NCBI RefSeq assembly: GCF_006345805.1
Contig: NC_042998.1
Coordinates: 61,256,001-61,320,000 of the forward strand
Origin: Octopus sinensis
Taxonomy: Eukaryota
Reading direction: 5' to 3'
DNA: 64,000 bases
The notes under the pieces: model-generated
Databases searched by the model: none
Seen by the model: only the letters and a program-made list of their open reading frames with translations
Told to the model about the DNA's origin: nothing
Made by a program: the position numbers and the translations under genes
In this document: piece after piece, positions 1 to 64,000 of the stretch
Numbering within the stretch: position 1 is the stretch's first letter
How the letters are laid out: each line of letters starts with the position of its first letter

Positions 1-1736
1 TACGATCTGTTGGCTAGGAGGAGATGTGCCAGGAAGTTAAACCCACAGACACACACACAGACAAACAAGTTGAGTTTCATATATATATAGATAATACATA
101 TTCTAATCTGAGACATTCTGGGAAGATACTCCGGCAAGAGATCATATCTCATATCAAACATCAGACTACCTTAAAAATGTGACATCTTCATAAGATGATA
201 AATCAACAAGAACTTCTGGATAACGATTCTGGAACCAAATGAAATTGTCTCTAACAAATTTTACCAATTGAAAACGTTTTTATTTGCAATTTGTTATTGA
301 ATCTCCTACATTAGAAAGCTGAAAATGAGGTTCTTATAAGTAATTTTGACTTTAATTATCAGATTCACAACATGATAATACATCATGAAACATCTCTGTT
401 GGTTCACAACTGATGGTCATTCAGTCTTATCATTCTCCACCTCTCCTTCAAATCACCATTTGTATCCTCATTTTCTCACAACTTTCACTCTCTGCATCCT
501 CAGTATTCTTCTGTCAACACTTCTCAACGTGTCCCCTTGAATGATAAAACACATCATAAGAGCAGTAAGAACTGTCAAATTTTATGGGATGCAAGAAAAA
601 CTGACCAATGCTAGTGCTCAAATTTACACAAAATGCTATAATTAATAATCTAAATATTTACCAATTAAGGACTTTCACAGCAACACTGACCAAATGATTT
701 CACAATTATATTTTCTAATGTTTGTTGAGATATTGTGATTGGGCCTCATACTTTACCAAGACCAACATTGATGTTCTAGTAAGTAACACTGATTGGTTTT
801 TGGATTCTCAAGATATTTGTAAATCATTAACCATCTCACAAATAAATTTGTCTTAGCTTCAAACATTTAGTCTTGGCATTCTCCACCTCTCTTTCAAGTC
901 ATTGTTCTTATCCTCATTTTCTTATAATTTCAGTCCCTGCATCCTCATCATTCTTCCGTTATCACAAAAAATTCTCACTTTCTCTATATGTCATCATGAT
1001 TGTAAAAACACATCAAAGAGCAATGAGAATTGTATAATATTATGAGATGCAAGACAACCTGACCAGTGCTAGCACTACGAGAAAATGACCCCAGTACACA
1101 CATGAATTTACACCTGTGTAGCAGGGTCTGACAGACAGAAACTGTCTTCGATGTTATTGTTAATATAAGAACAACATCAAAAGGAATATCTAATTCCATT
1201 CATGTCACCAAAGTTACACTACAAATTTTCACTGATGTTAATTAAGACCAACTAATTACAAACGCTCACAGAAATGATTATATATATATCTAAATAGTAT
1301 CATAAATATACAGAAATGTTTCACATGTGTTTCAGGAGACAATAACATCTAGACCTCATTGGACTGTAGAAGTCAATAATCCCAGTTTTTAGTAAAGTGG
1401 TTGTGTGCCCACGAAAAACAGTAGAATTACTTACACAGAAGGTAATAAAGTTTAAATCTGTTGGGTGAGAGTACAAGATGATGCTATGAGATAATAGGGT
1501 TCAATTTCAGACATACAAATGTAAATCAGTTAATAAATAATATCTGATTCATTATCATGTTAAAAGGTTTCATATGTAATACAAAAAAACACTGTCTGTC
1601 ATTGCAATAAAAGATATCTATACAAATTGTATATAATCTGACTAGAAAATAAGTGACTTTCATTACAGAGAATATGATTATGTCCCAGCATAGATCTCTT
1701 TTGCAGAATTTCCTTCTCCTCCTCATCCTTTCACAC

Positions 1737-1850
1737 CGCAACCGGCATCACCAGCACCACCGCCGCCGCCACCACCGCCACCGCCAGCACCACCACAAGG
1801 TCAAGCACCACCACCATCACCACAACCTCAACCACAACCACCAACACCAC

Positions 1851-1915
<65 letters not shown>

Positions 1916-2060
1916 ACATCATCATCATCATCATCATCATCATCAGCATCACCACCATCATCACCATCACCACCACAACGACGACGACGACCACCACGAC
2001 CACCACGACCACCACAACCACCACCATCATCATCATCATCATTATCATCAACATCATTGT
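1737..2060. repeat. Compound (CAC/CAT/GAC)n trinucleotide microsatellite at a unit boundary
   Basis: Directly visible. Shorter homologous tracts at ~9595, 12285-12447, 15405, 16120-16230 and 19225-19293. Confidence 0.95.
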
Positions 2061-2482
2061 TGCTTAATATCCGCATTCGATGCTGAGGTCTCACTGAAGG
2101 CTGGCAATCCTAAAGGCTGCAACAGGCTCCAATTTGATCTGATATGTACGCATATATATGTAAACATATATATATTTGTATACATATATATGCATATATA
2201 TACATATACATACATAGATATATCACAGTGAAAGTATTAACTCACATTACAATAGTGATTTTATTGTTTCACTTTTGACAAGTAATACTGAAATAGTGTT
2301 AGAAATAAGAGATTGCTCCAGGATCACATTAGGCAAGAAGTTGAAAATTGTTTGGCCCATGATACTGCATGGACATTAAGTAAGGCATGTGTGAAATTTG
2401 AATGAAATCATTTGGATAGTTCTAGAATTTTAGTGATGCAGAGAGACAAACATTTACACGCACAGATACATGCATTCTCAGT

Positions 2483-2525
<43 letters not shown>

Positions 2526-3123
2526 AGAGAGAGAGAGAGAGAGACTATCATACTCATTCTAGCCTGAGACATTCTGGGAAGATACTCCTGTAAGTGATGA
2601 TATCTCATATCACACATCAGACTACCGTAAATATCTGACATCTTCATAAGATGATAAATCAAGAAGACCTTGTGGAGGACGATTTTGTAAACAAATGAAA
2701 TTATCTTTAACAATTTTTACTAGTTAAAATCATTTTCAGTTTAGATTTGTTATTGAATCTCCTACATTAGATAGCTGAAAATGATGTTCTTATAAGTACT
2801 TTTGACTTTAATTGTCAGTTTCCAAAGATGTTAATACATCATTAATCATTTCTGTTGGTTCACAACTAACAGTCACTCAGTCTTGTCATTCTCCACCTCT
2901 CTTTCAAATCACCATTCTTATCCTCATTTTCTCACAACTTTCACTCCCTGCATCCTCAGTATTCTTCTGTCATCACTTCTCAACATGTCACCTTGAATGA
3001 ATAAACACATCATAAGAGCAGTAAGAACTGTCTAATTTCCTGGGATGCAAGAAAAACTGACAAATGCTAGTCCTCAAGGGAAAACTGATCGAAATCAATT
3101 TGGTACTTCAGTTTTATACTCAC

Positions 3124-3180
3124 CATGTGGATGTGATGTACTTTGACCTGTTGTACTTGGCTGTCCAAATCTATATATGT
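3124..3180 (-). CDS. Cassette exon E copy, 57 nt, xIYRFGQPSTTGQSTSHPH
   Basis: tatgaatttcag|...|gtgagtataaaa, no stop in phase 1. Confidence 0.55.
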
Positions 3181-3923
3181 CTGAAATTCATAATTTTAAG
3201 AGTTTTAATTTATAGTAAAATTTTCCAGCATTCACATTCACAAAAAAAGCTACAATTATTAATCTAAATTTTTACTTTTCATGAATATTCACAGCAACAC
3301 TGACCAAATGATATCGCAGTTAGACTTTCAAATATTTGTTGAGATTTTCTTATTGAGCCTCATACTTTACCAAAACCAACATTGATGTTCTATTAAGTAA
3401 CCCTGTCTTTGATGATGATGATGATGATGATGATCGTCATCATTATCATCGTCATCCTCATCATCATCATTGTTTTTTAATATCCAATTTCGATGCTGAG
3501 GTCTCACAGAATGCTGGCAAATCTAAAGGCTGCACCAGGCTCCAATCTGATCTGATATGCATGCATATATATGTAAACATTCTGTATTTGTATAAATATA
3601 TGCATATATATACATATACACACATAGATATATCACGGTGAAAGTATTAACTCACATTACAATAGTGATTTATTGTTTCACTTTTGACAGTAATACTGAA
3701 ATAGTGTAAGAGATAAGAGATTGATCCATGATCACATTAAGCAAGAAGTTGAAAATTTGTTTGGCTCATGATACTGTATGGACCTGAAGTAAGGCATGTG
3801 TGAAATTTGAATGAAATCATTTGGATAGTTCTAGAATTTTAGTGATGCAGACAGACAAACATTTACACGCACAGATACACTCATTCTCAGTTACATAAAT
3901 ATATATATATATATATATATATA

Positions 3924-3958
<35 letters not shown>

Positions 3959-6127
3959 GAGAGAGAAAGAGAGAGGGAGAGAGAGGAGAGCGACTATCAC
4001 TATCATAATTCTAGCCTGAGACATTCTGGGAAGATACTCCTGTAAGTGATGATATCTCATCATCATCAACATCATCATCATCATCATCATCATCATTATC
4101 ATCATTGTTGCTTAATATCCGCATTCGATCCTGAGGTCTCACTGAAGGCTGGCAAGCCTAAAGGCTGCACCAGGCTCCAATTTGATCTGATATGTATGCA
4201 TATATATGTAAACATATATATTTGTATACATATATATGCATATATATGCATATACATACATAGATATATCACAGTGAAAGTATTAACTCACATTACAATA
4301 GTGATTTATTGTTTCACTTTTCACAAATAATTGTACCTTAGCTTCAACCAGTCTGTCTTGGCATTCTCTACCTCTCTCTGAAGTCATTATTCTTATCCTC
4401 ATTTTCTTGTAACTTTCAGTCCCTGCATCCTCATTATTCTTCCGTCATCACTTAAACGTCTCACTTTCTCAACATGTCTTCATGATTGTAAAATCACATC
4501 AGAGAGCAACGAGATATGTATAATATTATGAGAGATGCAGACAACCTAACCAGTGCAAGCACTATGAGAAAATGGCCCCAGTACACACTTGAAAGTGATT
4601 GGTGAATGAGAGGAGACAGCTTAATTTTGAGTGGAACCTACAATGGAATTGTGGACATTGGAGTCTGGTACTGCACTCAGCTTGCCAGCTCTGGTCAAAC
4701 TCTCCAACTCATGCCAGCTTGGACACTGGATGTTATATGGTGATGATGATTGTTAATCTTATTATTGCCTGTGTTACATAGAACAGAAACAAAATCCTTT
4801 ATATAATGTTTGCTGTTAAGAAGAGTATCTTGTCATGTAAAATCCAGAGTATTTAAGTGAGATGTGTGTGTACCTGAAGCATTCAAAGTTGATGTTAACT
4901 CTGAATGAGAACAGATTTGGACATTGATGACCCATCTAATGGTTGGGAGCATGGATGCAGATGATGAATGATAATGACACTATCATTTATTATTTTGTAT
5001 TTATTATTTTGCCTCTTGCAGCCTGTATCTAATCTTTATGACTTGGAACTTACACCTGTGTAGAAGGGTCTGACTGACAGAAACTGTCGTGTAATGTTTT
5101 TGTTAATAATGAGAGCAACATCACAAGTAAAATCTAATACCATTGATGTTACCAACTTTATACTACATTTGTCACTGATATTAATTAAAACAAACTAATT
5201 ACAAAAGGTCACAGTAATGCTTTATAAAATATACCTAAATAGTATCATAACTATACAGAAATGTTTCACATATTGTTTCAGGACACAATAAATCTGGACA
5301 TTATTGGACTATTGAAGTCAATAATCCCAGTTTGTAGAGAAGTGGTTCTGTGCACAAGACAAACAGTAGAATTACTTACACAGATGGTAATAAGGTTTAA
5401 ATCTGTTGGGTGAGGGTAGAAGATGATGCCATGATAAAATCAGTTAAATTTCAGACATACAAATGTAAATCAGTTAATGAATAATATCTGATTCATTATC
5501 ATGTTAACAGGTGTATATGTAATACAAAAAAAACACTGTCTGACATTGCAATACTAGATATATATAAATTGTATATAATCTGACAAAAAAATAAGTGACT
5601 TTCATTAGAGTGAATATGATTATTTCTCAGCACAGATCTATATTGTAGACGTTCCATCAAAATCATCATCATCATCATTGTCATCGTCGTTTAATATCTG
5701 CTTTCTATGCTTAGGTCTGACTGATTTCTGGCAAGCGAGAAGACTGAACCAGGCTCCAATCTGATATGATATGTATGCATATACATGTAAACATACATAT
5801 ACATGCATACATATATATGCATATATATACAGACATATGCATACATAAATATATCACAGTGAAACTATTAACTCACATTACAATAGTGATTTTATTGTAT
5901 CACTTTTGACAAGTAATACTGAAATTGTGTTAGAGAGAAGAGATTGCTCCAGGAACACATTAGGCAAGAAGTTGAAAATTTGTTTGGCCCATGACACTGC
6001 ATGGACCTTAAGTAAGGCCTGTGTGAAAATTGAATGAAATCATGTGGGTAGTTCTCTAGTTTTAGTGATACACACATACAAACAGACAGACAGACACACA
6101 TTTACACTCACACTTACATGCATTCTT

Positions 6128-6545
6128 AGGCGCAGGAGTGGCTGTGTGGTAAGTAGCTTATCTACCAAACACATGGTTGTGGGTTCAGTCCCACTGCGTG
6201 GCAACTTGGGCAAGTGTCTTCTACTATAGCCTTGGGCCGACCAAAACCTTGTGAGTGGATTTGGTAGACGGAAACTGAAAGAAGACCATCGTATATATGT
6301 ATATATATGTATGCGAGTGTGTATTTGTTGTGTGTCTGTGTTTGTCCCCTAGCATTGCTTGACAACCGATGCTGGTGTGTTTATGTCCCCGTTACTTAGC
6401 GGTTCGGCAAAAGAGACCGATAGATAGAATAAGTACTGGGCTTACAAAAGAATAAGTCTCGGGGTCGAGTTGCTCGACTAAAGGCGGGTGCTCCAGCATG
6501 GCCGCAGTCAAATGACTGAAACAGGTAGAAGAATAAAAGAATAAA
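6128..6545 (+). mobile_element. tRNA-derived octopus-type SINE inserted in one array unit
   Basis: Head ggcgcaggagtggctgtgtggtaag...gggttcagtcccactgcgtggc, internal AT/GT tract, (gaataaaa)n tail. Absent at this site in sister units. Confidence 0.85.
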
Positions 6546-9500
6546 AAGAAAGAATAAAAAGAATATATATATATAGACTATAATACATATTCTAACCTGA
6601 AACATTCTGGGAAGATACTCCGGTGAGAGATGATATCTCATATCAAACATCAGAGTATGTAAATCTCTGACATCTTCATATGATTAAAAATCAAGAAGAA
6701 CTTCTGGAGAACAATTTTGTAAACAAAGGAAATTATCTTTAACAATTTTTACCACTTAAAAACCTTTCCAGTTGAGATTTGTTATTGAATCTCCTACATT
6801 AGAAAGCTGAGAATGATGTTCTTATAAGTACTTTTGACTTTAATTGTCAGTTTCCCAAGATGTTAATAACATCATTAATCATCTCTGTTGGTTCACAAAT
6901 GACAGTCACTCAGTCTTCTCATTCTCCACCTCTCTTTCAAATCACCATTCTTATCCTCGTTTCACTCCCTGCATCTTCATTATTTTTCTGTCATCACTTC
7001 TCAACGTGTCACCTTGAATGAAAGAACACATCATAAGAGCAGTAAGAACTGTCTAATTTCTGGCTGCAAGAAAAACTGACCAATGCTAGTCCCCAAGAGA
7101 AAACTTATAGAAATAGATTTGGTACTTCAGTTTTATACTCACCATCTCGCATTCATATCCATCCTCCATGTGTGAGTCTGAAATTCATAATTTCAAGTGT
7201 TATAATTTATAGTAAAATTTACCAGCATTCACATTCACACAAAAAGCTATAATTATTAATCTAAACTTTTACCAATTAAGGACATTCACAGCAACACTGA
7301 CCAAATGATTTCACAGTTATATTTTCTAATGATTGTTGAGATTTTGTGATTGAGCCTCAAACTTTACCAAGCCAACATTGATGTTCTAGTAAGTAACACT
7401 CCCTCTGATTATTGGATTCTCAAGATGTTAGTAAATCATTAACCATCTCACAAATAATTGTATCTTAGCTTCAACCATTCGGTCATGTCATTCTCCACCT
7501 CTCTTTCAAGTCATTGTTCTTATCCTCATTTTCTTGTAACATTCAGTCCCTGCATCCTCATTATTCTTCCGTTATCACTTAAACTTCTCACTTTCTCAAC
7601 ATGTCTTCATGATTGTAAAAACACATCAAAGAGCAATGAGAATTGTATAATATTATGAGATGCAAACAACCTGACCAGTGCTAGCACTATGAGGAAATGG
7701 CCCCAGTACACACTTGAAAGTGATTGGTAAATGAGAGGAGACAGCATAATTTTCTGTGGAACGTTCAATCTAATTGTGGACATTGGAGTCTGGTGCTGCC
7801 CCTGCTTGCCAGCTGTGGTCAAACTGTCCAACGCAGGCCAGCATGGACAATGGACGTAAAATGTTGATGATGATGACAATCTTATTAGTGCCTGTGTTAC
7901 AATAAAACATACCCAAGAAACTTTATAAAATGGTTGCTGTTAAGATGGTAACTTGTCAAAGAAAATCCAGAGTATTTACGAGAGATGTGTGGCTACCTCA
8001 AGCAGTCAAAGTGGATGTTAACTCTGAACAAGAACTGGCTTGGACATTGATGACCCATCTAATCGACGGGAGCATGGAAGCAGATGATGAATGATAATGA
8101 CATTATCATTATTTTTTTTGTATTTATTATTTTGCCTCTTTCAGCCTGTATCTAATCTTTATGACTTGGAACTAACACATGTGTAGCAGGGTCTGACTGA
8201 CAGAAACTGTCGTGTAATGTTTTTGTTAATAATGAGAGCAACATCACAATTAAAATCTAATCCCATTGATGTTACCAACTTTATACTACATTTGTCACTG
8301 ATATTAATTAAAACCAACTAATTACAAAAGGTCACAGTAATGCTTTATAAAATATACCTAAATAGTATCATAACTATACAGAAATGTTTCACATATTGTT
8401 TCAGGAAACAATAACATCTGGACATTATTGGACTATTGAAGTCAATAATAAGTTTCTAGAGAAGTGGTTCTGTGCACAAGACAAACAGTAGAATTACTTA
8501 CACAGAGGGTAATAAGGTTTAAATCTGTTGGGTGAGGGTACAAGATGATGCTGTTATACAATCAGGTTAAATTTCAGACATACAAATGTAAATCAATTAA
8601 TGAATAATATCCGATTCATTATCATGTTAACAGGTTGTATATGTAATACAAAAAAAAAAACACTGTCTTACATTGCAATACTAGATATTTATATAAATTG
8701 TATATAATCTGACTAAAAAATAAGTGACTTTCATTACAGTGAATATGATTATTTCTCAGCACAGATCTATATTCTCCACCTCTCATTGTTCTTATCCTCA
8801 TTTTCTTATAATTTCAGTCCCTGCATCCTCATCATTCTTCCGTTATCACATAAACTTCTCACTTTCTCAACAGGTCATCATGATTGTAAAACACATGAAA
8901 GAGCAATGAGAATTGTATAATATTGAGATGCAAAACAACCTGACCAGTGCTAGCGCTATGAGAAAATGGCCCCAGTACACACATGAACTTACACCTGTGT
9001 AGCAGGGTCTGACAGACAGAAACTGTCTTCGATGTTATTGTTAATATAAGAACAACATCAAAGGAATATCTAATTCCATTCATGTCACCAAAGTTACACT
9101 ACAAATTTCACTGATGTTATTAAGACCAACTAATTACAAATGGTCACAGAAATGATTTATATAATATATCTAAATAGAATCATAAATATACAGAAATGTT
9201 TCACATGTTGTTTCAGGAGACAATAACATCTAGACCTCATTGGACTATAGAAGTTAATAATCCCAGTTTGTAGAGAAGTGGTTGTGTGCCCACGAAAAAC
9301 AGTAGAATTACTTACACAGAAGGTAATAAGGTTTTAAATCGTTGGGTGAGAGTACAAGATGATGCTATGAGAAAATAGGGTTCAATTTCAGACATACAAA
9401 TGTAAATCAGTTAATAAATAATATCTGATTCATTACCATGTTAACAGGTTTCATATGTAATACAAAAAAACACTGTCTGTCATTGCAATAAAAGATATCT

Positions 9501-9657
9501 ATACAAATTGTATATAATCTGACTAGAAAAGAAGTGACTTTCATTACGGAGAATATGATTATGTCCCAGCACAGATCTCTATTGCAGAATATCCTCCTCC
9601 TCCTCCTCCTCCTCCTCATCCTTTAACACCACAACCATATGTATATATATGTATATA

Positions 9658-10473
9658 GGCTAATAGCAGTATTGCCCGGCTCGTGTGCTCTTGTGTTCTA
9701 TGCACGCGTGAATTAAGCTAAACTTGGATGAAGTTCAATCAAAATTCAATTATTTTGGTTTTAAAATCAAGCATTTTATACCCTTATGTGTTCTAATTCC
9801 TCAATAGGAAGTACGTAGAAGCGTTTTATAAATTTTTGTTGATCAAATAATTGCATTGTTGAATTATTCTTTTATATCAGTATTTCTCAACGGGGATTTC
9901 AAGGTAGAGATCCAGGAGCTGCTGGCGATGTATCGTGATAATCAAAAATCCAGCCTGCTAAAATTTGGTTAAAGGGATTCAAACTGCAGACTCAATGCAA
10001 AATGGTTACATTTAATTCAAAGCATTAAAAATGTTACGTAAACAATTGGTATGTGTTCACATAGTCCAAATGATTTATACGAAAATACCTACCAGGCTAT
10101 ATCCCGAAAAGCCATTTCTTTGCTGAATTCCTCTAATGTTTATGGCGATTCGTTTTTATATCTTGATTTTGGATTTTTCATGTATTTTACGCATGCTTGT
10201 ACGCGTGGTGAACACAGATTACGTCAAAAAGCTGACTGATTAAATTTCACTATTCAACGCATGGGATAAGGCGTAAACAAACGCATTATCGATTTTTGCA
10301 ATTGCGAGATGAATTTGGAACAAAAATAGCGCAGTTCAATTTTCATTCGCCTAAACCTTAAGTGACCCATTTTTGGTGGTTCTACGATCTGTTGGCTAGG
10401 AGGAGATGTGCCAGGAAGTTAAACCCACAGACAAACACACAGACAAACAAGTTGAGTTTCATATATATATAGA
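9658..10473. mobile_element. ~810-bp non-autonomous insertion, Helitron/Helentron-like, carried by type II units
   Basis: Block taatagcagtattgcccggc...gacaaacaagttgagtttcatatatatatagat is present at 9658-10473, 12803-13617, 16586-17402, truncated at 15470-15643, and as a 3' end at 1-90. It is absent from type I units. The class assignment rests on recalled terminal motifs only. Confidence 0.6.
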
Positions 10474-13400: not shown

Positions 13401-14187
13401 AACGCATGGGATAAGGCCTAAACAAACACATTATCGATTTTTGCAATTGCGAGATGAATTTGGAACAGAAATAGCGCAGTTCAATTTACATTCGCCTAAA
13501 CTTTAAGTGACCCATTTTTGGTGGTTCTACGATCTGTTGGCTAGGAGATGTGCCAGGAAGTTAAACCCACAGACACACACACAGACAAACAAGTTGGAGT
13601 TTCATATATATATAGATAATACATATTCTAATCTGAGACTTCTGGGAAGATACTCCGGCAGAGATCATATCTCATATCAAACATCAGACTACCTTAAAAA
13701 TGTGACATCTTCATAAGATGATAAATCAACAAGAACTTGGGATAACGATTCTGGAACCAAATGAAATGTCTCTAACAAATTTTACCGTTGAATGAAAACG
13801 TTTTATTTGCAATTTGTTATTGAATCTCCTACATTAGAAAGCTGAAAATGAGGTTCTTATAAGGAATTTTGACTTTAATTATCAGATTCACAATATGATA
13901 ATACATCATAACATCTCTGTTGGTTCACAACTGATGGTCATTCAGTCTTATCATTCTCCCACTCTCCTTCAAATCACCATTTGTATCCTCATTTTCCACA
14001 AACTTTCACTCCTGCATCCTCAGTATTCTTCTGTCAACACTTCTCAACGTGTCCCCTTGAATGATAAAACACATCATAAGAGCAGTAAGAACTGTCAACT
14101 TTTATGGGATGCAAGAAAAACTGACCAATGCTAGTGCTCAAAGGAAAACTTATATAAATGAATTTGGTACTTCAGTTTAATACTCAC

Positions 14188-49300: not shown

Positions 49301-50869
49301 TTAACATGCAAGTGGCTGAGCACTCCACAGACACACATACCCATGATGTAGTTCTCGGCAAGATTCAGCATGGCACAGAGTGTGACAAGGCTAGTCCTTT
49401 GAAATACAGGTACAAGAGAAACAGGAAGAAAGAATGAGAGAAAGTTGTGGTGAAAGAGTACAGCAGGAGTCACCAGCACCCCCTGCCAGAGGCTCGTGGA
49501 GCTTTAAGTGATTTCGCTCAATAAACACTCACAACACCTGGTCTGGGAATCAAACCTGTGATCCTACGACTGCTGACCTAACCACTGGGCCATTGCACCT
49601 CCACACCCATGAATATAATCAATACTAGAAACTACAAGTTGATCTGGGAGTAAAGAACAACAATAAATAGAGAGAACCAGACTGGACAGGGCAGATACAG
49701 CAACATTTCGCCACATACAATTAATCACCGCATGTCAGGGAAGTGTGGACTTCAACAAGATGAAGACATGCTGTGTCTGCTTCTATGGATCAGTGATTTA
49801 CATCTGTTCTCATTTGGTTAGCTACATGTGTACAATATATTACTTGATCGAGGTTGGGTGCTGTGGCTATACAACTACAACAAGCACAACAGTACTGAAA
49901 ATAAAAGAGCAGTTGAATATAAAGTGGATGTAGTTTGTTGTTTGTGTGAAGATCCAACACACATTACACCTACCACTTTCACACCCAGACACATCTATAA
50001 CTTCCCAGAATGTTCCTACAACAGAAAGTAACATTTACACACCAAACCAATAGCTTTATTGTCTATGTCCACCTTGACCACCACTTATTCCTGGGATATA
50101 CACTAACAGAAGAAAATACTAAAGACAGATATCTATGATCTTCTGGCTATGTCCACCATGACCAACTCCTCTTTAGTTACCAACAAAACAACAGACTGGA
50201 CAGTAGAAGATATGTTGTTCCATCACTGCCAACCAGCAGCCCATACAATAGGCTAATGCAGGATGAGGCAGTGAGGCAGCCTTCACGTGATCACTTTAGC
50301 TATGAGATATAGCAGCTAAATTTCACTCAAAATACACCCTAACGTGCTATAAACAATACATTTGATAAAATGCTCCCACAAACAAGTCAGGTGTTTCACA
50401 CTTAGAAGACTTTTTATCATATGTCTGCCAGATGACGATAGACACTGGCTAAATAACACTAACTTATCGACAAACTCAGAAAAAAGGTAAAACAAACAAA
50501 AACATTACCATTAACTCACCTGCTTACACCAACACAACAGTGTATTTCAGTTTCCAATTCCAAAAGAAAATATCAACTGTATTGTCCACTCGCTTCCTAA
50601 CCCCCAATGAAGAATAACAGACCACTCATGAATAGATAAAAGTTAAGAATCTTTCTTTCAACCTCGCTTCTTCTACCTACTATCTTTGCACATATCATTA
50701 TTATTCCTTCATTATTCTCTCATTATTCTTTCAGTATTCTCTCATTACTCTGTCTAGTTCAGTAACATGCCATTCATGTAAATATGCTTTTCATTTAGTC
50801 TTGTCTTCCTGTTGCTCCTGAAGATAACCTTATATTCATTGATTCACTTAACTACTAAAGTCTTAACAC

Positions 50870-53800: not shown

Positions 53801-54880
53801 GGGCGGGTGTGCTGAAAGTGTAACTGCTAGAGTAAGAATAGCTTGGGCAAAGTTCAGAGAGCTCTTACCTCTGCTGGTGACAAAAGGCCTCTCGCTCAGA
53901 GTAAAAGGCAGACTGTATGACGCATGTGTACGAACAGCCATGCTACATGGCAGTGAAACATAGGCCGTGACTGCTGAGGATATGCGTAAGCTTGCAAGAA
54001 ATGAAGCCAGTATGCTCCAATGGATGTGTAATGTCAGTGTTCATACTCGACAGAGTGTAAGTACCTTGAGAGAAAAGCTGGACCTAAGAAGCATCAGTTG
54101 TGGTGTGCAAGAGAGACGTTTGCGCTGGTATGGTCATATGGTGAGAATGGATGAAGATAGTTGTGTGAAAAAGTGCCACAACCTAGCGGTTGAGGGAACC
54201 TGTGGAAGAGGCAGACCCAGGAAAACCTGGGATGAGGTGGTGAAGCACGACCTTTGAACTTTAGGTCTCACCGAGGAAATGACTAGAGACCGAGACCTTT
54301 GGAAGTATGCTGTGCATGAGAAGTCTCGGCAGGACAAGTGAGGCCATAACCCGTGGCCTCTACATGGGGTGTAGCCAGTCCACTTATGCATACCTTTCCT
54401 TCATGGGACACAAAACTCTACTTGTGAAGACCTGTTGAGGCAAGTGAAAATCGAAATCGATCAAAATCAATGGAAATCGCAGCTGTGATACCAGTGCCGG
54501 TGGTACATAAGAGAACAATCCGAATGTGGCCATTGCCAGTGCCACCCCGACTGGCCTCGTGCCGGTGGCACGTAAAAAGCACTATCCGATCATGGCCGTT
54601 GCCAGCCTCGCCTGGCAACATGCCGGTGGCACGTAAATAGAAACATCCGATCGTGGCCTTTTGCCAGCCTCGTCTGGCACCTATGCCGGTGGCACGTAAA
54701 AAGCACCCACTACACTCATGGAGTGGTTGGCATTAGGAAGGACATCCAGCTGTAGAAACATTGCCAGATCAAACTGGGCCTGGTGCAGCCTTCTGGCTTC
54801 CCAGACTCTAGTTGAACTGTCCAACACATGCTGGCATGGAAAGCGGACGCTAACTGATGATGATGATGATGATGATGATT
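50870..54880 (+). mobile_element. Near full-length but inactivated RTE-clade LINE (APE endonuclease and RT) with a long 3' tail
   Basis: LRVGTLNVGTL, DICCIQEVRW, AGDFNGH, GKAPGPSG, NYRGIKLL, AFVDMEKAFD and LLYANDL across ORFs 51257-51910, 52136-53149, 53168-53677 and 53967-54257, separated by stops and frameshifts. 20-bp tandem repeats at ~50985-51040. Tail ends in (gat)n. The 5' boundary is approximate. Confidence 0.92.
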
Positions 54881-56857
54881 GTGCTGTTTCATTTATCAGT
54901 ATTACTGTAGATATTTTATGAAATTTTGGTAATATCAGTACCCTTTATAGAATTACATTACAGTTAATCTTTCAATTGGAAATAAGGAGGGGAACCAGTT
55001 CACAGTCCTTATAGAAACCAATTAAGCATTCTTATTTTATACCTACCAACATGATCTCACTCTCGTGCTAGACTTTTAGCCAAATTTAGGAGATCCTGCT
55101 TGTTCGGCTTAGATTATCTGAAATATCTAAGGTTTTACACTTTATAGTTAAATTTCTATATCTCTATTGGAATTTATATCTTATTGTTGTGAGATATTGC
55201 TATCATTAATGGTCAACTGGTGACCACTGTGATTTCAGTCAACATTTTTATACTTTCTACTGTGGTACCATGTAATAACTTGATATCTAAGTCCATATCA
55301 GAGCAAACTAGACTTCCTAAATCTCCTCTCTATATTAAGACATCCTACTTAATCTAACAATGTTGCATTTATCTCATTTATTTAACACTTGCTAAGGATT
55401 TTTATCACTTAGTTTTGTCTTCCATTAATTATATTTCTGCCATATCTATGATATGCCGTTGTCCTCTCAAGTCTAGTCTTTACTAACCAATATTCTTCTC
55501 ATTATCTGCTTAATTCCAATGTCAACCAGGGCTTAGCCATCTAAGATCTAGCCACAAACACATAACACACCACTTCAATTAGGATCATCATACACCTGCT
55601 CACTCTCTCTCTCTCTCTGTTAAAGGTTGCCACTGGTAATCTTGAATTTTAACTACCTACATTACAGTTCACCAGAATGTCATCTGATTCTTGAAATATT
55701 TGAAAACATATACTTGTCATTCATCCTTCTTAATAAAGCAGGTTCTCTTCAGGTTAGCAAAGATTAGATCTACACAGGTGAAATGGACAGTGGTAATGTG
55801 CCCTCAAACACTGTGCATTTGCACTCAACATCATGAACTATATATAACCAATCATCCATATATTGCAACGAAAGTATCTGGAATGGTACAAAAGAACTGA
55901 TTCTCAAGAATATAGGTTACCTTTATTTAAATCTCATCTATATATCAAACAAAGTTACCTTCCCCTTGGTAATATCTCCTTTATCCATGTGGTTGCCATT
56001 GATAGGGTAGAAACCAAGTAACCAGAAAATTTGAGGACTTGGAACTTACACCTGTGTAGCAGGGTCTGACTGACAGAAACTGTCTTGTGATGTTATTGTT
56101 AGTATAAGAACAACATCAAAAGGAATATGTAATCCCATTCACGTTACCACTGTTATACTATATTTGTCACTGATGTTAACTAAAACCAACTAATTACAAA
56201 AGGTCGAGTAATCCTTTATAAAATATACCTAAATAGTATCATAAATATACAGAAATATTTCACATTTTGTTTTAGGACACAATAACATCTGGACCTTATT
56301 GGACTATAGAAGTCAATAATGCCAGTGTGTAGAGAAGTGGTTAAGTGCACAAGAAAAACAGTAGAATTACTTACACAGATGGTAATAAGGTTTAAATCTG
56401 TTGGGTGAGGGTACAAGATAATGCTATAACAAAATAAGTTTAACTTCAGACATACAAATGTAAATCAGTTAATGAATAATATCTGATTCATTACCATGTT
56501 AACAGTTTGTATATGTAATACAAAAAAACACTGTCTGACATTGCAATACTAGATATCTATATAAATTGTATATAATCTGACTAAAATATAAGTAATTTTC
56601 ACTACAGTGAATATGATTATTTCTCAGCACAGATCTATATTGTATAAATTCCATCATCATCATGATCGTTGCTTAATATCCACTTTCTATGCTGAGGTCT
56701 GACTGGGGCTGGCAAGCGAGAAGGCTGCACCTGGCTCCAATCTGATATGATATATATGCATATATATGTAAACATACATATACATGCATACATATATGTG
56801 CATATATATACAGACATATATTTACACAAATATATCACAGTGAAAGTATTAACTCAC

Positions 56858-57104
56858 ATTACAATAGTGATTTTATTGTTTCACTTTTGACATGTAATGC
56901 TGAAATAGTGTAAGAGACAAGAGATTGCTCCAGGATCACATTAGACAAGAATTTGAAAATCTGTCTGGCCCATGACGCTGCATGGAGCCTAAGTAAGACG
57001 TGTGTGAAATTTGAATGAAATCATGCAGGTAGTTCTCGAGTTTTAGTGATGCACACATACAGGCAGACAGACAAACATTTACACTCACACATACATGTAT
57101 TCTC

Positions 57105-57141
<37 letters not shown>

Positions 57142-59128
57142 ATAATACATATTCTAACCTGAGCCATTCTGGGAAGATAGTCTGGCAAGAGATGATATCT
57201 CATATCAAACATCAGAGTACTGTAAAACACTGACATCTTCATAAGATGAAAAATCAAGAAGAAATTCTGGAGAACGATTTTGTAAACAAAAGAAATTATC
57301 TTTAACAATTTTAACCACTTAAAAACATTTTCAGTTGAGATTTGTTATTGAATCTCCTACATTAGAAAGCTGAGAATGATGTCCTTATAAGTACTTTTGA
57401 CTTTAATTATCACTCTCAGAAGATGTTAATAACATCATTAAGCATCTCTGTTGGCTCACAACTGACAGTCACTCAGTCTTGTCATTCTCCACCTATCCTT
57501 CAAATCACCATTCTTATCCTCATTTTCCCACAACTTTCACTCCCTGCATCCTCATTATTCTTCTTTCATCACCTCTCAACTTGTCACCTTGAATAAAAAA
57601 CACATCATCAGAGCAGTAAGAACTGTCTTCTTTCATGGGATGCAAGAAAAACTGACCAATGCTAGTCCTCAAGGAAAAACTTATAGAAATCAATTTGCTA
57701 TTTTCAGTTTTATACTCACCATGTGTGATTGATGTACATTGAACTGGTGTACTTAACAGTTCATTTGGATTTAAGCCTGAAATACATAATTTCAAGTGTT
57801 ATAATTTATAGTAAAATTTACCAGCATTCACATTCACACAAAAATCTATAATTATTAATCTAAACTTTTACGTTTAACAAACATTCACAGCAACACTGAC
57901 CAAATGATTTTGCAGGTAGACTTTCTAACGCCTGTTGAGATTTTGTGATTGAGCCTCATACATTACCAACGCCAACATTGATGTTCTAGTAAGTGACACG
58001 GTCTTTGATAATTGGATTCTCAAGGTGTTAGTAAATCATTAACCATCTCACAAATAACTGTATCTTAGCTTCATCCATTCGGTCATGTCATGCTCCACCT
58101 CTCTTTAATGTCAATGTTCTTATCCTCATTTTCTTGTAACTTTCAGTCCCTACATCCTCATTATTCTTCTGTTATCACTTAAACTTATCACTTTCTCAAC
58201 ATGTCTTCATGATTGTAAAAACACATCAAAGAGCAATGAGAATTGTATAATATTATAAGATGCAAGACAACCTGACCAGTGCTAGCACTATGAAGAAATG
58301 GTCCCAGTACACACTTGAAAGTGATTGATAAATGAGAGGAGACAGCATAATTTTCTGTGGAACGTTCAATCAAATTGTGGACATTGGAGTCTGGTGCTGC
58401 CCATCAGCTTGCCAGCTCTGGTCAAACTGTCCAACCCATGCCAGCATGGACAATGGACGTTAAATGGTGATGATGATGACAATCTTATTAGTGCCTGTGT
58501 TACAATAAAACATACCCAAGATCCTTTATAAAATGGTTGCTGTTAAGAAGGGTATCTTGTCATAGAAAATCCAGAGTATTTAAGTGAGATGTGTGTGTAC
58601 CTCAAGCAGTCAAAGTGGATGTTAACTCTGAATAAGAACTGACTTGGACATTGATGACCCATCTAATCGATGGGAGCATGGAAGCAGATGATGAATGATA
58701 ATGACATTATCATTAATTTTTTTGTATTTATTATTTTGCATCTTGCAGCCTGTATATAATCTTTAGGACTTGAAACTTACACCTGTGTAGCAGGGTCTGA
58801 CTGACAGAAACTGTCGTGTGATGTTATTGTTAATATACGAACAACATCAAAAGGAATACTAATCCCATTCATGTTACTACTGTTTTACTATATTTGTCAC
58901 TGATATTAATTAAAACCAACTAATTACAAAAGGTCACAGTAATGCTTTATATAATATACCTAAATAGTATCATAAATATACAGAAATATTTCACATTTTG
59001 TTTTAGGACACAATAACATCTGGACCTTATTGGACTACAGAAGTCAATAATGTCAGTTTGTAGAGAAGTGGTTGTGTGCACAAGACAAACAGTAGAATTA
59101 TTTACATAGATGGTAATAAGCTTTAAAT
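56858..59128 (-). CDS. Candidate micro-exon gene, the most intact unit. Candidate exons 59106-59128, 58781-58810, 58601-58627, 58516-58539, 58277-58287, 57901-57924, 57822-57845, 57720-57776, ~57657-57667 (weak), 57159-57168, 56858-56899
   Basis: Each segment is bounded by AG and GT on the minus strand and seven are multiples of 3. A phase-consistent chain can be built to a TAA in the last segment. The start codon and some boundaries are unresolved, and I recognise no homologue. Confidence 0.4.
57720..57776 (-). CDS. Hypervariable phase 1-1 cassette exon E of the array gene, 57 nt, (G)LNPNELLSTPVQCTSITH
   Basis: Minus strand reads ...tatgtatttcag|exon|gtgagtataaaa. Length is divisible by 3. 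Only the phase-1 frame is open across all 57/66-nt copies. Near-identical copy at 60470-60526. Confidence 0.6.
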
Positions 59129-61661
59129 CTGTTAAGTGAGGGTACAAGATGATGCTGTTATAAAATCAGGTTAAACTTCAGACATACAAATGTGGATCAG
59201 TTAATGAATAATATCTGATTCATTATCATGTTACCGGGTTGTATATGTAATACAAAAAAAAAACACCGTCTTACATTGCAATACTAGATATCTATATAAA
59301 TTGTATATAATCTGACTAAAAAATAAGTGACTTTCATTACAGTGAATATGATTATTTCTCAACACAGATCTATATTGTAGACGTTCCATCAGCATGATCA
59401 TCATCATCATTGTCATCGTCGTTTAATATCTGCTTTCTATGCTTAGGTCTGACTGATTTCTGGCAAGCGAGAAGCCTGCACCTGGCTCCAATCTGATATG
59501 ATATGTATGCATATACATGTAAACATACATATACATGCATACATATATATGCACATATATACAGACATATGCATACATAAATATATCACAGTGAACCTAT
59601 TAACTCACATTACAATAGTGATTTTATTGTTTCACGTTTGACAAGTAATACCGAAATAGTGTAAGAGATAAGAGATTGCTCCAGGATCACATTAGGCAAG
59701 AATTTGAAAATCTAATTGGCCCATGACGCTGCATGGACCCTAAGTAAGACGTGTGTGAAATTTGAATGAAATCATGCAGGTAGTTCTTGAGTTTTAGTGA
59801 TGCACACATACAGACAGACAGACAGACAAACATTTACACTCACACATACATGCATTCTCAGGTATATATATATATATATATATATGGACAATAATACATA
59901 TTCTAACCTGAGCCATTCCGGGAAGATAGTCTGGCAAGGGATGATATCTCAAATCAAACATCAGAGTACTGTAAAACTCTGACATCTTCATAAGATGAAA
60001 AAATCAAGAAGAAATTCTGGAGAACGATTTTGTAAACAAACGAAATTATCTTTAACAATTTTTATCACTTAAAAACATTTTCAGTTGAGATTTGTTATTG
60101 AATCTCCTACATTAGAAAGCTGAGAATGATGTCCTTATAAGTACTTTTGACTTTAATTATCACTCTCAGAAGATGTTAATAACATCATTAAGCATCTCTG
60201 TTGGCTCATAACTGACAGTCACTCAGTCTTGTCATTCTCCACCTATCCTTCAAATCACCATTTATATCCTCATTTTCCCACAACTTTCACTCCCTGCATC
60301 CTCATTATTCTTCTTTCATAACCTCTCAACTTGTCACCTTGAATAAAAAACACATCATCAGAGCAGTAAGAACTGTCTTCTTTCATGGGATGCAAGAAAA
60401 ACTGACCAATGCTAGTCCTCAAGGAAAAACTTATAGAAATCAATTTGCTATTTTCAGTTTTATACTCACCATGTGTGATTGATGTACATTGAACTGGTGT
60501 ACTTAACTGTTCATTTGGATTTAAGCCTGAAATACATAATTTCAAGTGTTATAATTTATAGTAAAATGTACCAGCATTCACATTCACACAAAAATCTATA
60601 ATTATTAATCAAAACTTTTACCTCTTACAAACATTCACAGCAACACTGACCAAATGATTTTGCAGGTAGACTTTCTAACGCTTGTTGAGATTTTGTGATT
60701 GAGCCTCATACTTTTCCAAAGCCAACATTGATGTTCTAGTAAGTGACACGGTCTTTGAAAATTAGATTCTCAAGGTGTTAATAAATCATTAACCATCTCA
60801 CAAATAATTGTATCTTAGCTTCATCCATTCGGTCATGTCATGCTCCGACCTCACTTTAATGTCATTGTTCTTATCCTCATTTTCTTGTAACTTTCAATCC
60901 CTACATCCTCATTATTCTTCCGTTATCACTTAAACTTATCACTTTCTCAACATGTCTTCATGATTGTAAAAACACATCAAGGAGAAATGAGAATTGTATA
61001 ATATTATGAGATGCAAATAACATGACCAGTGCTAGCACCATGAGGAAATGGCCCCAGTACACACTTGAAAGTGATTGATAAATGAGAGGAGACAGCATAA
61101 TTTTCTGTGGAACGTTCAATCTAATTGTGGACATTGGATTCTGACATCTCATATCAAACATCAGACTACTGTAAAACTCTGACATCTTCATAAGATTGAA
61201 AATCAAGAAGAACTTCTGGAGAATGATTTTGTAAACAAACAAAATTATCTTTAACAATTTTTACCAGTAGAAAAAGGTTTCAGTTGAGATTTGTTATTGA
61301 ATCTCCTACATTAGAAAGCTGAGAATGATCTTCTTATAAGTACTTTTGACTTGAATTATCACTCTCACAAGATGTTAATACATCATCTCTGTAGGCTCAC
61401 AACTGACAGTCACTCAGTCTTGTCATTCTCCAACTCTCTTTCAAATCACCATTCTTATCCTCGTTTCTCACAACTTTCACTCCCTGCATCCTCATTATTC
61501 TTCCGTCAATATTTCTCAAAGTGTCACCTTGAATGAAAAAACATCATAATAATAGCAGTAAGAACTGTCTAATTTTATGGGACACAAGAGAAACTGACCC
61601 ATGGTAGTTCCCAAGAGAAAACTTATAGAAATCGATTTGGTACTTTCAGTGTTATACTCAC

Positions 61662-61718
61662 CATGATAGATTGATGCATTTTCAACAGGTGGACCTGGCT
61701 GTTCATTTAGATATAAAA
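61662..61718 (-). CDS. Cassette exon E copy, 57 nt, (V)LYLNEQPGPPVENASIYH
   Basis: tatgaaattcag|...|gtgagtataac, open in phase 1. Confidence 0.55.
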
Positions 61719-64000
61719 CTGAATTTCATAATTTCAAGTGTTATAATTTATAGTAAAATTTACCTGCGTACACATTCACACAAAAAGCTATAATTATTAA
61801 TCTAAACTTTTACCATTTACGAACTTTGACAGCAACACTGACCAAATGATTTCACAGTGAGTCGTTCTAATGCTTGTTGAGATTTTGTGATTGAGCCTCA
61901 TACATTACCAAAGCCAACATTGATGTTCTAGTAGATAACACTGTCTTTGATTATTGGATTCTCAAGATGTTAGTAAATCATTAACCATCTCACAAATAAT
62001 TGTATCTTAGCTTCATCCATTCGGTCATGTCATTCTCCACCTCTCTTTCAAGTCATTGTTCTTATCCTCCTTTTCTTGTAACTTTCACTCCCTACATCCT
62101 CATTATTCTTCCGTTATCACTTAACCTTATCACTTTCTCAACATGTCTTCATGATTGTAAAAACACATCAAAGAGCAATGAGAATTGTATAATATTATAA
62201 GATGCAAGACCACCTGACCAGTGCTAGCACTATGAGGAAATGGCCCCAGTACACACTTGAAAGTGATTGATAAATGAGAGGAGACAGCATAATTTTGAGT
62301 GGAACGTTCAATCTAATTGTGGACATTGGATTCTGATGCTGCCCATCAGCTTGTCGGCTCTGGTCAAACTGTCTAACCCAGCCAGCATGGACAATGGTGA
62401 TGATGACAATCTTATTAGTGCCTGTGTTACTATAAAACATACCCAAGAGACTTTATAAAATGGTTGCTGTTAAGATGGTATCTTATCATAGAAAATCCAG
62501 AGTATTTAAGAGTGATGTGTGGCTACCTCAAGAAGTGAAAGTGGATGTTAAGTCTGAATAAGAACTGGCTTGGACATTGATGACCCATCTAATCGACGGG
62601 AGCATGGAAGCAGATGATGAATGATAATGACATTATCATTAACTTTTTTGTATTTATTATTTTGCATCTTGCAGCCTGTATATAATCTTTAGGACTTGAA
62701 ACTTACACCTGTGTAGCAGGGTCTGACTTACAGAAACTGTCGTGTGATGTTATTGTTAATATAAGATCAACATCAAAAAGAACATCTAATCTCATTCATG
62801 TTACTACTGTTTTACTACATTTGTCACTGATATTAATTAAGACCAACTATTTACAAAAGGTCACAGTAATGCTTCATATAATATATATAAATAGTATCAT
62901 AAATATACAGAAATATTTAACATTTTATTTTAGGACACAATAACATCTGAACCTTATTGGACTATAGGAGTCAATAATGTCAGTTTGTTGAGAAGTGGTT
63001 GTGTGCACAAGAAAAACAGTAGAATTACTTACACAGATGGTAATAAAGTTTAAATCTGTTGGATGAGAGTAGATGATGCTGTTATAAAATCAGGTTAAAT
63101 TTCAGACGTACAAATGTAAATCAATAAATGAATAATATCTGATTCATTACATGATTCATGTTAACAGTTTGTATATGTAATACAAAAAAAATACTGTCTG
63201 ACATTGCAATACTAGATATCTATATAAATTGTATATATTCTGAGTAAAAAATAAGTGACTTTCATTACAGTGAATATGATTATGTCTCAGCACAGATCTA
63301 TATTGTAGAAGTTCCATCATCATCGTTATCATCATCATGATTGTTGTCGTCAAGTAATATCTGCTTTCCATGCTGACATGTATTGGACGGTCTGACTGAG
63401 AGCTGGCAAGCCAGAAGTTTGCACCAGTCTCCAAACTGATCTGACATGTGTGCATATATATGTAAACATACATATACATGCATACATATATATGCATATA
63501 TATACAGACATATACATACACAAATATATCACAGTGAAAGTATTAACTCACATTACAATGGCGATTCTATTGTTTCACTTTTGACAAGTAATACTGAAAT
63601 AGTGTAAGAGATAAGAGATTGCTCTTAGAACACATTAGGCAAGAAGTTGAAAATTTGTTTGGCCCATGACACTGCATGGACCTGAAGTGAGGCATGTGTG
63701 AAATTTGTATGAAATCAGCTGGGTAGTTCTCGAGTTTTAGTGATGCACACATACATACAGACACACATTTACATGCACACATACATGCATTCTCAGTAAT
63801 ATATATATATATATATCTTTATATAGACTATAAAACATATTCTAACCTGAGATATTCTGGGAAGATAATCCAGCGAGAAATAATATAGCATATCACATAT
63901 TAGACTACCGTAAAAATCTGACAACCTCATAAGATGATCAATCAAGAAGAACTTCTAGAGAACGATTTTATAAACAAAGGAAATTATCTTTAACAATTTT

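What the first reader, a model, noticed from the sequence alone, without database searches (positions are those of the whole stretch)
1..64000. Tandemly amplified candidate micro-exon gene family hidden in what looks like a 3-kb satellite
Seen: about 10-11 tandem units in two blocks. On the minus strand each unit repeats AG...GT-bounded segments of 23, 30, 27, 24, 11, 24, 24, 57/66, 10 and 42 nt, seven of them multiples of 3. In exon E, and more weakly in exon I, divergence between copies is concentrated inside the segment while the splice flanks stay nearly constant. Established: genes built from symmetric micro-exons generate peptide diversity by exon skipping (schistosome MEGs), and octopus genomes hold lineage-specific tandem gene clusters. 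Inference: this is a fast-evolving micro-exon family, perhaps for recognition, secretion or reproduction, that ORF-based annotation misses. I recognise no homologue.
Basis: partly seen in the sequence, partly recalled or inferred. Interest (0 to 1): 0.9.

Follow-up and report, generated by a model that had tools for sequence, protein, structure and literature searches.

The report
One spliced exon per satellite-like unit
The "3-kb satellite" is the front end of one annotated but unstudied Octopus sinensis gene in which each repeat unit carries one short coding exon, not ten, and whole-exon skipping gives at least ten annotated protein variants.

Summary
The tandem array is real: units of about 2.4-3.9 kb lie in window 1-19225 and 56031-64000. 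One unit holds 540 such segments of 10-66 nt, against 594 +/- 21 in shuffles.

Exon E is real. It is the clear diversity outlier of the unit (pi 0.366 against 0.129), sits between an invariant acceptor and the unit's best donor, and stays open in one frame in every copy. A search with the joined E translations found one protein cluster, Octopus sinensis LOC115232413 (RefSeq, isoforms X1-X10).

Window 1-17152 is 100% identical to that locus, with the minus strand as sense. A unique canonical AG/GT exon chain reproduces isoform X1 exactly. It has 16 coding exons, one E-type exon (36, 57 or 66 nt) per unit. All 14 internal exons are phase 1-1 and multiples of 3. The isoforms differ mainly by skipping of whole exons.

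Only two coding exons lie in the window: 7152-7143 and 3180-3124. Six further E copies lie upstream of the annotated start, and two are damaged. The protein has a disordered repeat array, an acidic linker and a probable C-terminal death domain.

So this is one gene, not a family, and annotation did not miss it. The exon-skipping idea is supported at the level of annotation.

The parts
1..19225 (-). Array block A (units A0-A6 plus partial units). The sense strand of LOC115232413 is the window's minus strand. Positions 1-17152 are identical to locus L001 17152-1.
7143..7177 (-). E-type exon copy A3, 35 nt (the usual class is 36 nt; one A is deleted). It holds the annotated start codon at 7152-7150, preceded in frame by TGA. 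Coding exon 1 is 7152-7143 (ATGCGAGATG = M R D + G), with donor gtgagtat.
3124..3180 (-). Coding exon 2, 57 nt, phase 1-1, encoding (D)IYRFGQPSTTGQSTSHPH. Acceptor tatgaatttcag, donor gtgagtat.
11057..11121 (-). E copy A4 of the 66-nt class. It is 65 nt long (frameshift) and its donor is weakened to gtgata. It lies upstream of the annotated coding sequence.
14188..14253 (-). E copy A5, 66 nt, both splice motifs intact, open frame RELPPRNERPATTRQRTSPSN. It lies upstream of the annotated coding sequence.
17979..18044 (-). E copy A6, 66 nt, with the donor GT mutated to TT. It lies upstream of the annotated coding sequence.
19226..56030 (.). Spacer without array sequence between the two blocks. 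It is rich in mobile-element remnants: SINE-like copies and LINE fragments.
56031..64000 (-). Array block B (B0 partial, B1, B2 half, B3, B4 partial). The array runs off the right end of the window.
57720..57776 (-). It is not in any annotated protein.
60470..60526 (-). E copy B2, 57 nt, one nucleotide different from B1.
61662..61718 (-). E copy B3, 57 nt, open frame LYLNEQPGPPVENASIYH. It differs from B1 at 30% of sites, against 9% in the flanks.
58320..58773 (-). Segment of about 450 nt present only in the B-type and A2/A3 units. It holds a dispersed SINE-like piece (about 58385-58479).
58781..58810 (-). It is not part of the annotated coding sequence.

Best explanation
The window is Octopus sinensis CM016860.1:61256001-61320000. 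It holds the 5' end and the upstream region of LOC115232413, which is read on the minus strand.

A genomic unit of about 2.7-4 kb carries one short phase-1/phase-1 exon, E, in classes of 36, 57 and 66 nt. This unit has been tandemly amplified at least 19 times over more than 100 kb. I infer unequal crossing-over as the cause. Higher-order 57+36 doublets of about 8 kb and runs of 66-nt units at about 3.1 kb are visible.

The E exons of successive units are spliced to one another. Each adds a module of 12, 19 or 22 residues, rich in P, S, T, Q and R, to a disordered N-terminal array. An acidic exon follows, then two duplicated 72-nt exons, then a last exon. The last three exons form a helical C-terminus that is probably a death domain.

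Every internal exon is a multiple of 3 in phase 1, so any of them can be skipped without breaking the frame. The ten RefSeq isoforms differ by exactly such whole-exon skips.

E diverges about 3 times faster than its introns, while its splice signals stay fixed. I infer relaxed or diversifying selection on a disordered peptide. Homogenisation of the introns by unequal exchange or gene conversion may add to the contrast.

In this window only two units supply annotated coding exons. Six more E copies lie upstream of the start codon, and two of them (A4, A6) are damaged. I read these as untranslated or decaying units. The other nine 'micro-exons' are chance AG...GT pairs.

Shown here: the array, the exon chain, the phases, the isoform differences and the rate excess. 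Inferred: the amplification mechanism, the selection regime, the death-domain role and the status of the upstream copies.
For: - phmmer with the 119-aa joined E translation against 1.84 billion representatives gave a single hit, P0001 (E = 9e-39, five stretches). It is XP_029658130.1, LOC115232413 isoform X7.
- Isoforms X1-X3 and X5-X10 were retrieved.
- Locus L001 was fetched, and window 1-17152 equals L001 17152-1 at 100% identity.
- Exactly one chain of AG/GT-bounded exons reproduces X1 (363 aa plus stop). Exon lengths are 10, 57, 66, 36, 57, 36, 57, 36, 66, 66, 66, 60, 129, 72, 72 and 206 nt, and every internal exon starts in phase 1.
- 17 E copies found by a flank-motif search in the merged 135 kb, plus A4 (found), give 18 listed copies; I counted about 19 units. 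All listed copies share the acceptor AG. All but A6 share the donor GT.
- Sequence differences between isoforms equal whole exons.
- E rate excess is shown. All substitution classes are raised, AT<>TA about 4-fold and GC<>CG about 2.7-fold.
- pN/pS is 1.2-2.2 in the open frame between classes. Within the 66-nt class, nonsynonymous to synonymous changes are 12:0 in five core copies (p = 0.03) and 18:4 in seven.
- C-terminus: all 8 weak sequence hits to solved structures are death domains, the best being ankyrin-3 DD at E = 0.0013. Pfam Death scores E = 0.053.
- The model shows coil for residues 1-240 and six helices in 242-345.
Against: - I saw no RNA data. The exon chain rests on a RefSeq computational model. 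That Gnomon isoforms need transcript support comes from my own knowledge, not from a tool result here.
- No homologue exists outside this one gene among 5.8 billion clusters, so there is no cross-species conservation to back the reading frame.
- The death-domain match is below Pfam's cut-off (14.1 against 22.6 bits).
- Both structure models are of low confidence (pLDDT 41 and 50), and the fold search gave nothing.
- The selection tests rest on few changes and on copies that are not independent. Within five core 66-nt copies the exon is not significantly more variable than its flanks (18% against 12%, p = 0.18).
- The annotated start depends on a 1-nt deletion in a homopolymer, which could be an assembly error.
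Confidence: 0.85

Rival explanations
1. One reading: each ~3-kb unit is a complete micro-exon gene of about ten exons, so the array is a family of 10-11 genes for secreted, fast-evolving peptides.
For: E is a real short symmetric exon. On my simple scoring matrices the minus strand has more splice-like sites than the plus strand (9 against 3 donors of at least 6 bits; 12 against 4 acceptors).
Against: - The X1 coding sequence uses exactly one exon per unit.
- AG...GT segments are no more frequent than in shuffles.
- No exon in the unit starts with ATG and encodes a real hydrophobic signal peptide. The only hits lie in TA microsatellite.
- Several candidate sites are not conserved.
- My best guesses for three of the proposed exons fall in a SINE-bearing insert that most block A units lack.
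- No protein holding other unit segments turned up.
Confidence: 0.03
2. The array is a non-coding satellite and LOC115232413 is an annotation artefact that chains pseudo-exons. E would then be only a mutational hot spot that happens to sit between splice-like motifs.
For: - There is no homologue in any other annotated proteome and no paper on the gene.
- Five of the ten window units that span the E position carry a damaged or deleted E. A3 has a 1-nt deletion, A4 a frameshift and weak donor, A6 a TT donor, and A0 and A2 have lost E.
- The 66-nt class is rich in CpG, which raises the mutation rate.
Against: - One frame stays open through 14 consecutive internal exons, all in phase 1.
- The acceptor AG is kept in every listed copy and the donor GT in all but one, although the exon body changes about 3 times faster.
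- Transversion classes that do not depend on CpG are also raised 3-4 fold.
- The nonsynonymous bias is 12:0.
- The chain ends in a domain whose only matches in solved structures are death domains.
- There are ten distinct isoform models.
Confidence: 0.08
3. The upstream E copies in the window (A4-A6 and B1-B3) are not relics. They would be used as 5' untranslated or coding exons of the same gene, or of an unannotated neighbour. The frameshifts in A3 and A4 would be assembly errors, so the true reading frame would start further upstream.
For: - A5, B1, B2 and B3 keep both splice motifs and the open frame.
- The A3 lesion is a single-base loss in an AAA run next to the annotated ATG, with TGA just upstream.
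- The range on record is the coding range only, because it ends exactly at the stop codon. Untranslated exons are therefore unknown.
Against: - The A6 donor is TT, and A4 has both a frameshift and a weakened donor.
- None of the upstream copies holds an in-frame Met.
- No protein in the collections holds B-type peptides.
- The B copies have lost all CpG and sit at background GC.
- A 37-kb mobile-element spacer separates block B from the gene.
Confidence: 0.2

Closest known systems
Schistosome micro-exon genes (MEGs)
   Same: - Most of the coding sequence is built from very short symmetric exons separated by introns of several kb. MEG exons are given as 3-81 bp and introns as up to 5 kb in bioRxiv 10.1101/2023.06.21.545858. 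Here 13 of 14 internal exons are 36-72 nt and the E-to-E introns are 2.6-5.2 kb.
- Protein variants arise by skipping whole exons.
- The gene is restricted to one lineage.
   Different: - There is no signal peptide, so secretion is not expected.
- There is no sequence similarity to any MEG.
- The exons are copies of one another, each carried by an amplified 3-kb unit, rather than unrelated micro-exons.
- The C-terminus looks like a death domain.
- It is a single gene, not a family.
Genes grown by tandem amplification of an exon-bearing genomic unit, such as human LPA kringle IV-2 repeats, titin PEVK exons and NBPF Olduvai repeats (named from my own knowledge, not tested here)
   Same: - A kb-scale unit with in-frame exon(s) is repeated head to tail inside one gene, so the locus looks like a satellite.
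- Higher-order repeat structure is present.
- The number of repeats sets the protein's length.
- As with titin PEVK, the exons are short, symmetric, encode disordered sequence and are skipped extensively.
   Different: - There is one exon of only 36-66 nt per unit of about 3 kb.
- The exon classes differ far more than their introns.
- The protein is an orphan with no known function.
Classical non-coding satellite DNA
   Same: Head-to-tail units of about 3 kb extend over more than 100 kb. Unit subfamilies and indels are present, and a mobile-element-rich spacer without array sequence separates the two blocks.
   Different: Each unit holds a spliced coding exon with conserved splice signals.

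Membership tests
Schistosome-type micro-exon genes (MEG) | Most of the coding sequence consists of short symmetric exons (3-81 bp, multiples of 3) between long introns | tested here: met
   Internal exons are 57, 66, 36, 57, 36, 57, 36, 66, 66, 66, 60, 129, 72 and 72 nt, all phase 1-1. The definition is taken from bioRxiv 10.1101/2023.06.21.545858.
Schistosome-type micro-exon genes (MEG) | Protein variation by exon skipping | tested here: met
   Isoforms X1-X10 differ by whole E-type exons. This holds at the level of annotation only; I saw no reads.
Schistosome-type micro-exon genes (MEG) | Secreted product with an N-terminal signal peptide | tested here: not met
   The N-terminus is MRDDIYRFGQPSTT..., with no hydrophobic segment. 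No signal-peptide-like first exon exists in the unit.
Schistosome-type micro-exon genes (MEG) | Sequence relationship to known MEG proteins | tested here: not met
   The only hits in 1.84 billion representatives and 5.8 billion clusters are isoforms of the same octopus gene.
Death-domain superfamily (C-terminal domain of the product) | Match to Pfam Death (PF00531) at or above the gathering score | tested here: not met
   14.1 bits against a cut-off of 22.6; E = 0.053; profile positions 6-76 of 86.
Death-domain superfamily (C-terminal domain of the product) | Sequence similarity to solved death domains | tested here: inconclusive
   All 8 hits are death domains (ankyrin-3 at E = 0.0013; RIPK1 at 0.02-0.09; TNFR1 at 0.7-0.8). 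The result is consistent but weak.
Death-domain superfamily (C-terminal domain of the product) | Six-helix bundle fold | tested here: inconclusive
   Six helices are predicted, but pLDDT is 41 and 50. Foldseek gave no hit with E of 0.001 or better.
Tandem exon-amplified repeat genes | A repeated genomic unit carries in-frame exon(s) that are spliced in series within one transcript | tested here: met
   One exon per unit, chained in frame, reproduces X1 exactly.
Non-coding satellite DNA | Units carry no coding or spliced sequence | tested here: not met
   E exons form the annotated coding sequence. Rfam gave no hit.

The most novel reading that the evidence does not exclude
LOC115232413 would be an octopus-specific adaptor with a death-fold domain. 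Its disordered N-terminus would be diversified on purpose in three ways: ongoing amplification of a 3-kb exon-bearing unit, positive selection on the exon bodies while the introns are homogenised, and combinatorial skipping of at least 11 symmetric cassette exons. This would be a somatic isoform repertoire for recognition or signalling, comparable in logic to Dscam or MEGs but inside a cytosolic death-domain protein. The intact upstream copies in this window (A5, B1-B3) would be a reserve of further cassettes.
Probability: 0.15. Interest if true: 0.65.

Novelty: new member of a known kind. Interest (0 to 1): 0.4.

Why it matters
The case shows that a stretch that reads like a 3-kb satellite can be the body of a protein-coding gene, and that a local excess of divergence between fixed splice motifs is a usable signal for such exons.

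For cephalopod biology it flags an uncharacterised, apparently lineage-restricted gene. Its length and isoform set can change by unit gain or loss and by exon skipping, and it ends in a probable death domain, a module of immune and cell-death signalling.

It is not a new principle. Genes grown by exon-unit amplification and symmetric cassette exons are well known, and the gene is already in RefSeq.

Tried and rejected
- **RNA genes.** Rfam at gathering thresholds gave no hit over the whole window. ARAGORN found only one tRNA-Glu-like sequence, in the spacer.
- **Long reading frames.** None falls in the units except through low-complexity runs. The frames in the spacer are LINE endonuclease and reverse transcriptase.
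- **A first exon per unit.** The search for an ATG-plus-signal-peptide exon found only TA-microsatellite artefacts.
- **Islands under purifying selection.** The longest invariant run is 25 nt, so nothing looks exon-like by conservation.
- **Internal 600-nt sub-repeat.** 58297-57934 matches 57679-57334 at about 70%, but no second E-like exon follows it.
- **CpG or GC decay as the sole cause of E's divergence.** Rejected, because transversion classes that do not depend on CpG are also raised 3-4 fold. It may still contribute.
- **First protein search.** The joined E peptides found nothing, because the length filter (65-208 aa) excluded the 300-363-aa isoforms. The search without a length limit found them.
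- **Exact look-ups.** Those of a LINE frame and of isoform X7 were not on record. The longest isoform, X1, was.
- **Structure prediction.** Both models were of low confidence, and the fold search was uninformative.
- **Literature.** Nothing on LOC115232413, cephalopod micro-exon genes or an octopus 3-kb satellite.
- **'Exon I'.** It could not be located from the finding's text.

Full report
**1. The array**

The window is AT-rich, with GC of about 0.32-0.45. Taking 57052-59801 as a 2750-nt reference unit, BLAST finds collinear copies at 78-96% identity that fill 1-19225 (block A) and 56031-64000 (block B).

- Units differ by large indels. Most block A units lack reference segment 58320-58773. 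That segment holds a dispersed SINE-like piece which also occurs five times in the spacer.
- Most block A units also carry an extra segment of about 800 nt.
- The 37 kb between the blocks is a mosaic of mobile-element remnants, including a broken LINE with endonuclease and reverse-transcriptase frames at 51257-53677.
- Rfam finds nothing.
- "About 10-11 units in two blocks" is therefore a fair description. The array runs off both ends of the window.

**2. The micro-exon list**

On the minus strand one unit has 159 AG and 183 GT. There are 540 such segments of 10-66 nt, 168 of them multiples of 3. Dinucleotide shuffles give 594 +/- 21 and 198 +/- 13.

The segments recur in each unit only because the units are near-identical. 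Any AG or GT is kept in about 72% of unit cells, and several candidate sites are poorly kept. Exon X has an acceptor of 0.2 bits.

**3. Exon E is different**

In a MAFFT alignment of all units, the 57-nt window at 57778-57722 has the highest diversity outside the microsatellite-like end of the unit. Pi is 0.366, against a body mean of 0.129 and a next-best window of 0.217.

- Parsimony gives 52 changes over 57 sites in E against 0.33 per site in 1099 flank sites. Every substitution class is raised, including AT<>TA (about 4-fold) and GC<>CG (about 2.7-fold). CpG decay alone therefore does not explain the excess.
- Pairwise, E diverges 2-3.4 times faster than its flanks.
- The island starts right after an invariant tttcag. 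It ends at ATG|gtgagtataaaactg, the best donor in the unit at 10.5 bits.
- Copies are 57, 57, 57, 66, 66, 65, 35 and 57 nt long. One frame is free of stop codons in every copy, although the 65- and 35-nt copies break the phase into the next exon.

**4. What E belongs to**

I joined six E copies in that frame (119 aa). The word-indexed search found nothing, because of its length filter. The exhaustive phmmer search of 1.84 billion representatives gave exactly one hit, P0001 (330 aa, E = 9e-39, five stretches).

P0001 is XP_029658130.1, [quoted passage not shown]. Its sequence is a string of E-type peptides followed by an acidic stretch and a helical tail. Nine isoforms, X1-X3 and X5-X10, were recovered.

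The longest isoform, X1, is on record in GCA_006345805.1, CM016860.1:61184485-61273152 (locus L001), with a coding range of 68.7 kb. Window 1-17152 equals L001 17152-1 at 100% identity. The window is therefore CM016860.1:61256001-61320000, and its minus strand is the sense strand.

**5. Gene structure**

Exactly one chain of canonical AG/GT exons reproduces X1, 363 residues plus the stop codon. It has 16 coding exons.

- Exon 1 is window 7152-7143.
- Exon 2 is window 3180-3124.
- Exons 3-12 are E-type exons of 66, 36, 57, 36, 57, 36, 66, 66, 66 and 60 nt, spaced 2.6-5.2 kb apart, to the left of the window.
- Exon 13 is 129 nt and acidic.
- Exons 14 and 15 are duplicated 72-nt exons.
- Exon 16 is the last exon, 206 nt.
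- All 14 internal exons are multiples of 3 and start in phase 1.
- A flank-motif search over the window merged with L001 listed 17 E copies, and A4 adds one more; I counted about 19 units. Every listed copy keeps the acceptor AG, and all but A6 keep the donor GT.
- There is one coding exon per unit. Nothing else in the unit is in the coding sequence.

The isoforms differ as follows:

| Isoform | Difference from X1 |
|---|---|
| X2 | lacks one 36-nt exon |
| X5 | lacks one 66-nt exon |
| X6 | lacks a 57+36 pair |
| X8 | lacks two 66-nt exons |
| X3 | lacks one 66-nt exon and uses an acceptor 6 nt upstream |
| X7 | uses an alternative acidic exon |
| X10 | lacks the acidic exon |
| X9 | starts elsewhere |

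**6. The window's share of the gene**

The annotated ATG at 7152 lies inside the A3 copy of the 36-nt class. This copy has lost one A (GAAATGCAAGATG has become GAATGCGAGATG). That puts a TGA in frame just before the Met codon, which is internal in the other copies.

Upstream of it lie six more copies:

| Copy | State |
|---|---|
| A4 | 65 nt, donor gtgata |
| A5 | intact |
| A6 | donor TT |
| B1-B3 | intact splice motifs and open frame, but no CpG, background GC, and present in no protein in the collections |

Units A0 and A2 have lost E altogether. The range on record ends exactly at the stop codon, so it is the coding range, and untranslated exons are unknown. Whether the upstream copies are transcribed is open.

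**7. The product**

There is no signal peptide. Residues 1-240 are predicted as coil, followed by six helices.

The tail gives Pfam Death at E = 0.053, below the cut-off. Its only sequence hits among solved structures are eight death domains, the best being ankyrin-3 at E = 0.0013. The structure models were too poor for a fold comparison. "Probable death domain" is the most that can be said.

No relative exists outside this gene in the protein collections. No paper mentions the gene.

**8. Why E diverges faster**

Between exon classes, pN/pS in the open frame is 1.2-2.2, against mostly below 1 in the other two frames.

Within the 66-nt class, five core copies show 12 nonsynonymous and 0 synonymous changes (p = 0.03). 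Seven copies show 18:4, with 32% variable sites in the exon against 16% in the flanks (p = 0.0035). In the five core copies alone, the exon is not significantly more variable than its flanks.

This fits relaxed or diversifying selection on a disordered peptide, with the splice signals under constraint. Homogenisation of the introns among units may add to the contrast. The data are too few to separate these explanations.

**9. Verdict**

- It is one exon per unit, one gene, already annotated, and probably not secreted.
- In architecture it resembles schistosome MEGs and exon-unit-amplified genes such as titin PEVK or LPA. It is not a member of the MEG family.
- That RefSeq isoforms require transcript support is my own knowledge, not a tool result here.
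- Direct RNA evidence is the decisive missing piece.

Noticed in passing
window 19284-20797: Right at the end of block A lies a near-perfect foldback. Arms of 456 nt (19284-19739 and 19815-20270) are 99% complementary with a 75-nt loop. A 100% direct copy follows (19739-20215 = 20321-20797). This could be a foldback element or an assembly artefact.
   Followed up: partly
window 7143-7177 and 11057-11121: Two E copies each carry a one-base length defect relative to their class (35 against 36 nt; 65 against 66 nt). The first lies in an AAA run and sets the annotated start codon. Both could be long-read assembly errors rather than real lesions.
   Followed up: partly
window 20803-21188, 28228-28413, 39270-39664, 46067-46393, 54490-54876, and 58385-58479 inside B-type units: A dispersed SINE-like element with internal 61-63-nt tandem repeats (GTGCCGGTGGCACGTAAAAAGCACC...) occurs in both orientations. 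One copy sits inside the unit subfamily shared by block B and units A2/A3, so that subfamily was amplified after the insertion.
   Followed up: partly
window 51257-53677 (+), related fragment 44771-45683: A degenerate LINE is split into three frames, with endonuclease (Exo_endo_phos) and reverse-transcriptase (RVT_1) matches.
   Followed up: partly
window 24492-24564 (+): ARAGORN calls a tRNA-Glu (TTC), but Rfam at gathering threshold reports no tRNA there. It may be a tRNA-derived repeat or a pseudogene.
   Followed up: no
window 1749-2026: A (CAC)n microsatellite of about 93 copies lies in the intron downstream of coding exon 2. It produces a spurious 192-aa reading frame.
   Followed up: no
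L001 73206-73277 and 74291-74362; L001 54281-54409 and about 69814: Outside the window, the same gene has a second, smaller exon duplication: two 72-nt exons 1.1 kb apart with identical splice flanks (VRLT..QLVESLAQKW). It also has two paralogous acidic exons used alternatively (X1 against X7).
   Followed up: partly
L001 21163-37198: The three 36-nt exons are identical, and the 57-nt exons differ by one base. They alternate at about 4 kb, giving a period of about 8 kb. This points to a recent higher-order amplification of a two-unit block. The 66-nt units form a separate run at about 3.1 kb.
   Followed up: partly
window 57334-57679 and 57934-58297: Each unit holds an internal duplication of about 350 nt at about 70% identity, flanking the E exon on both sides.
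   Followed up: partly
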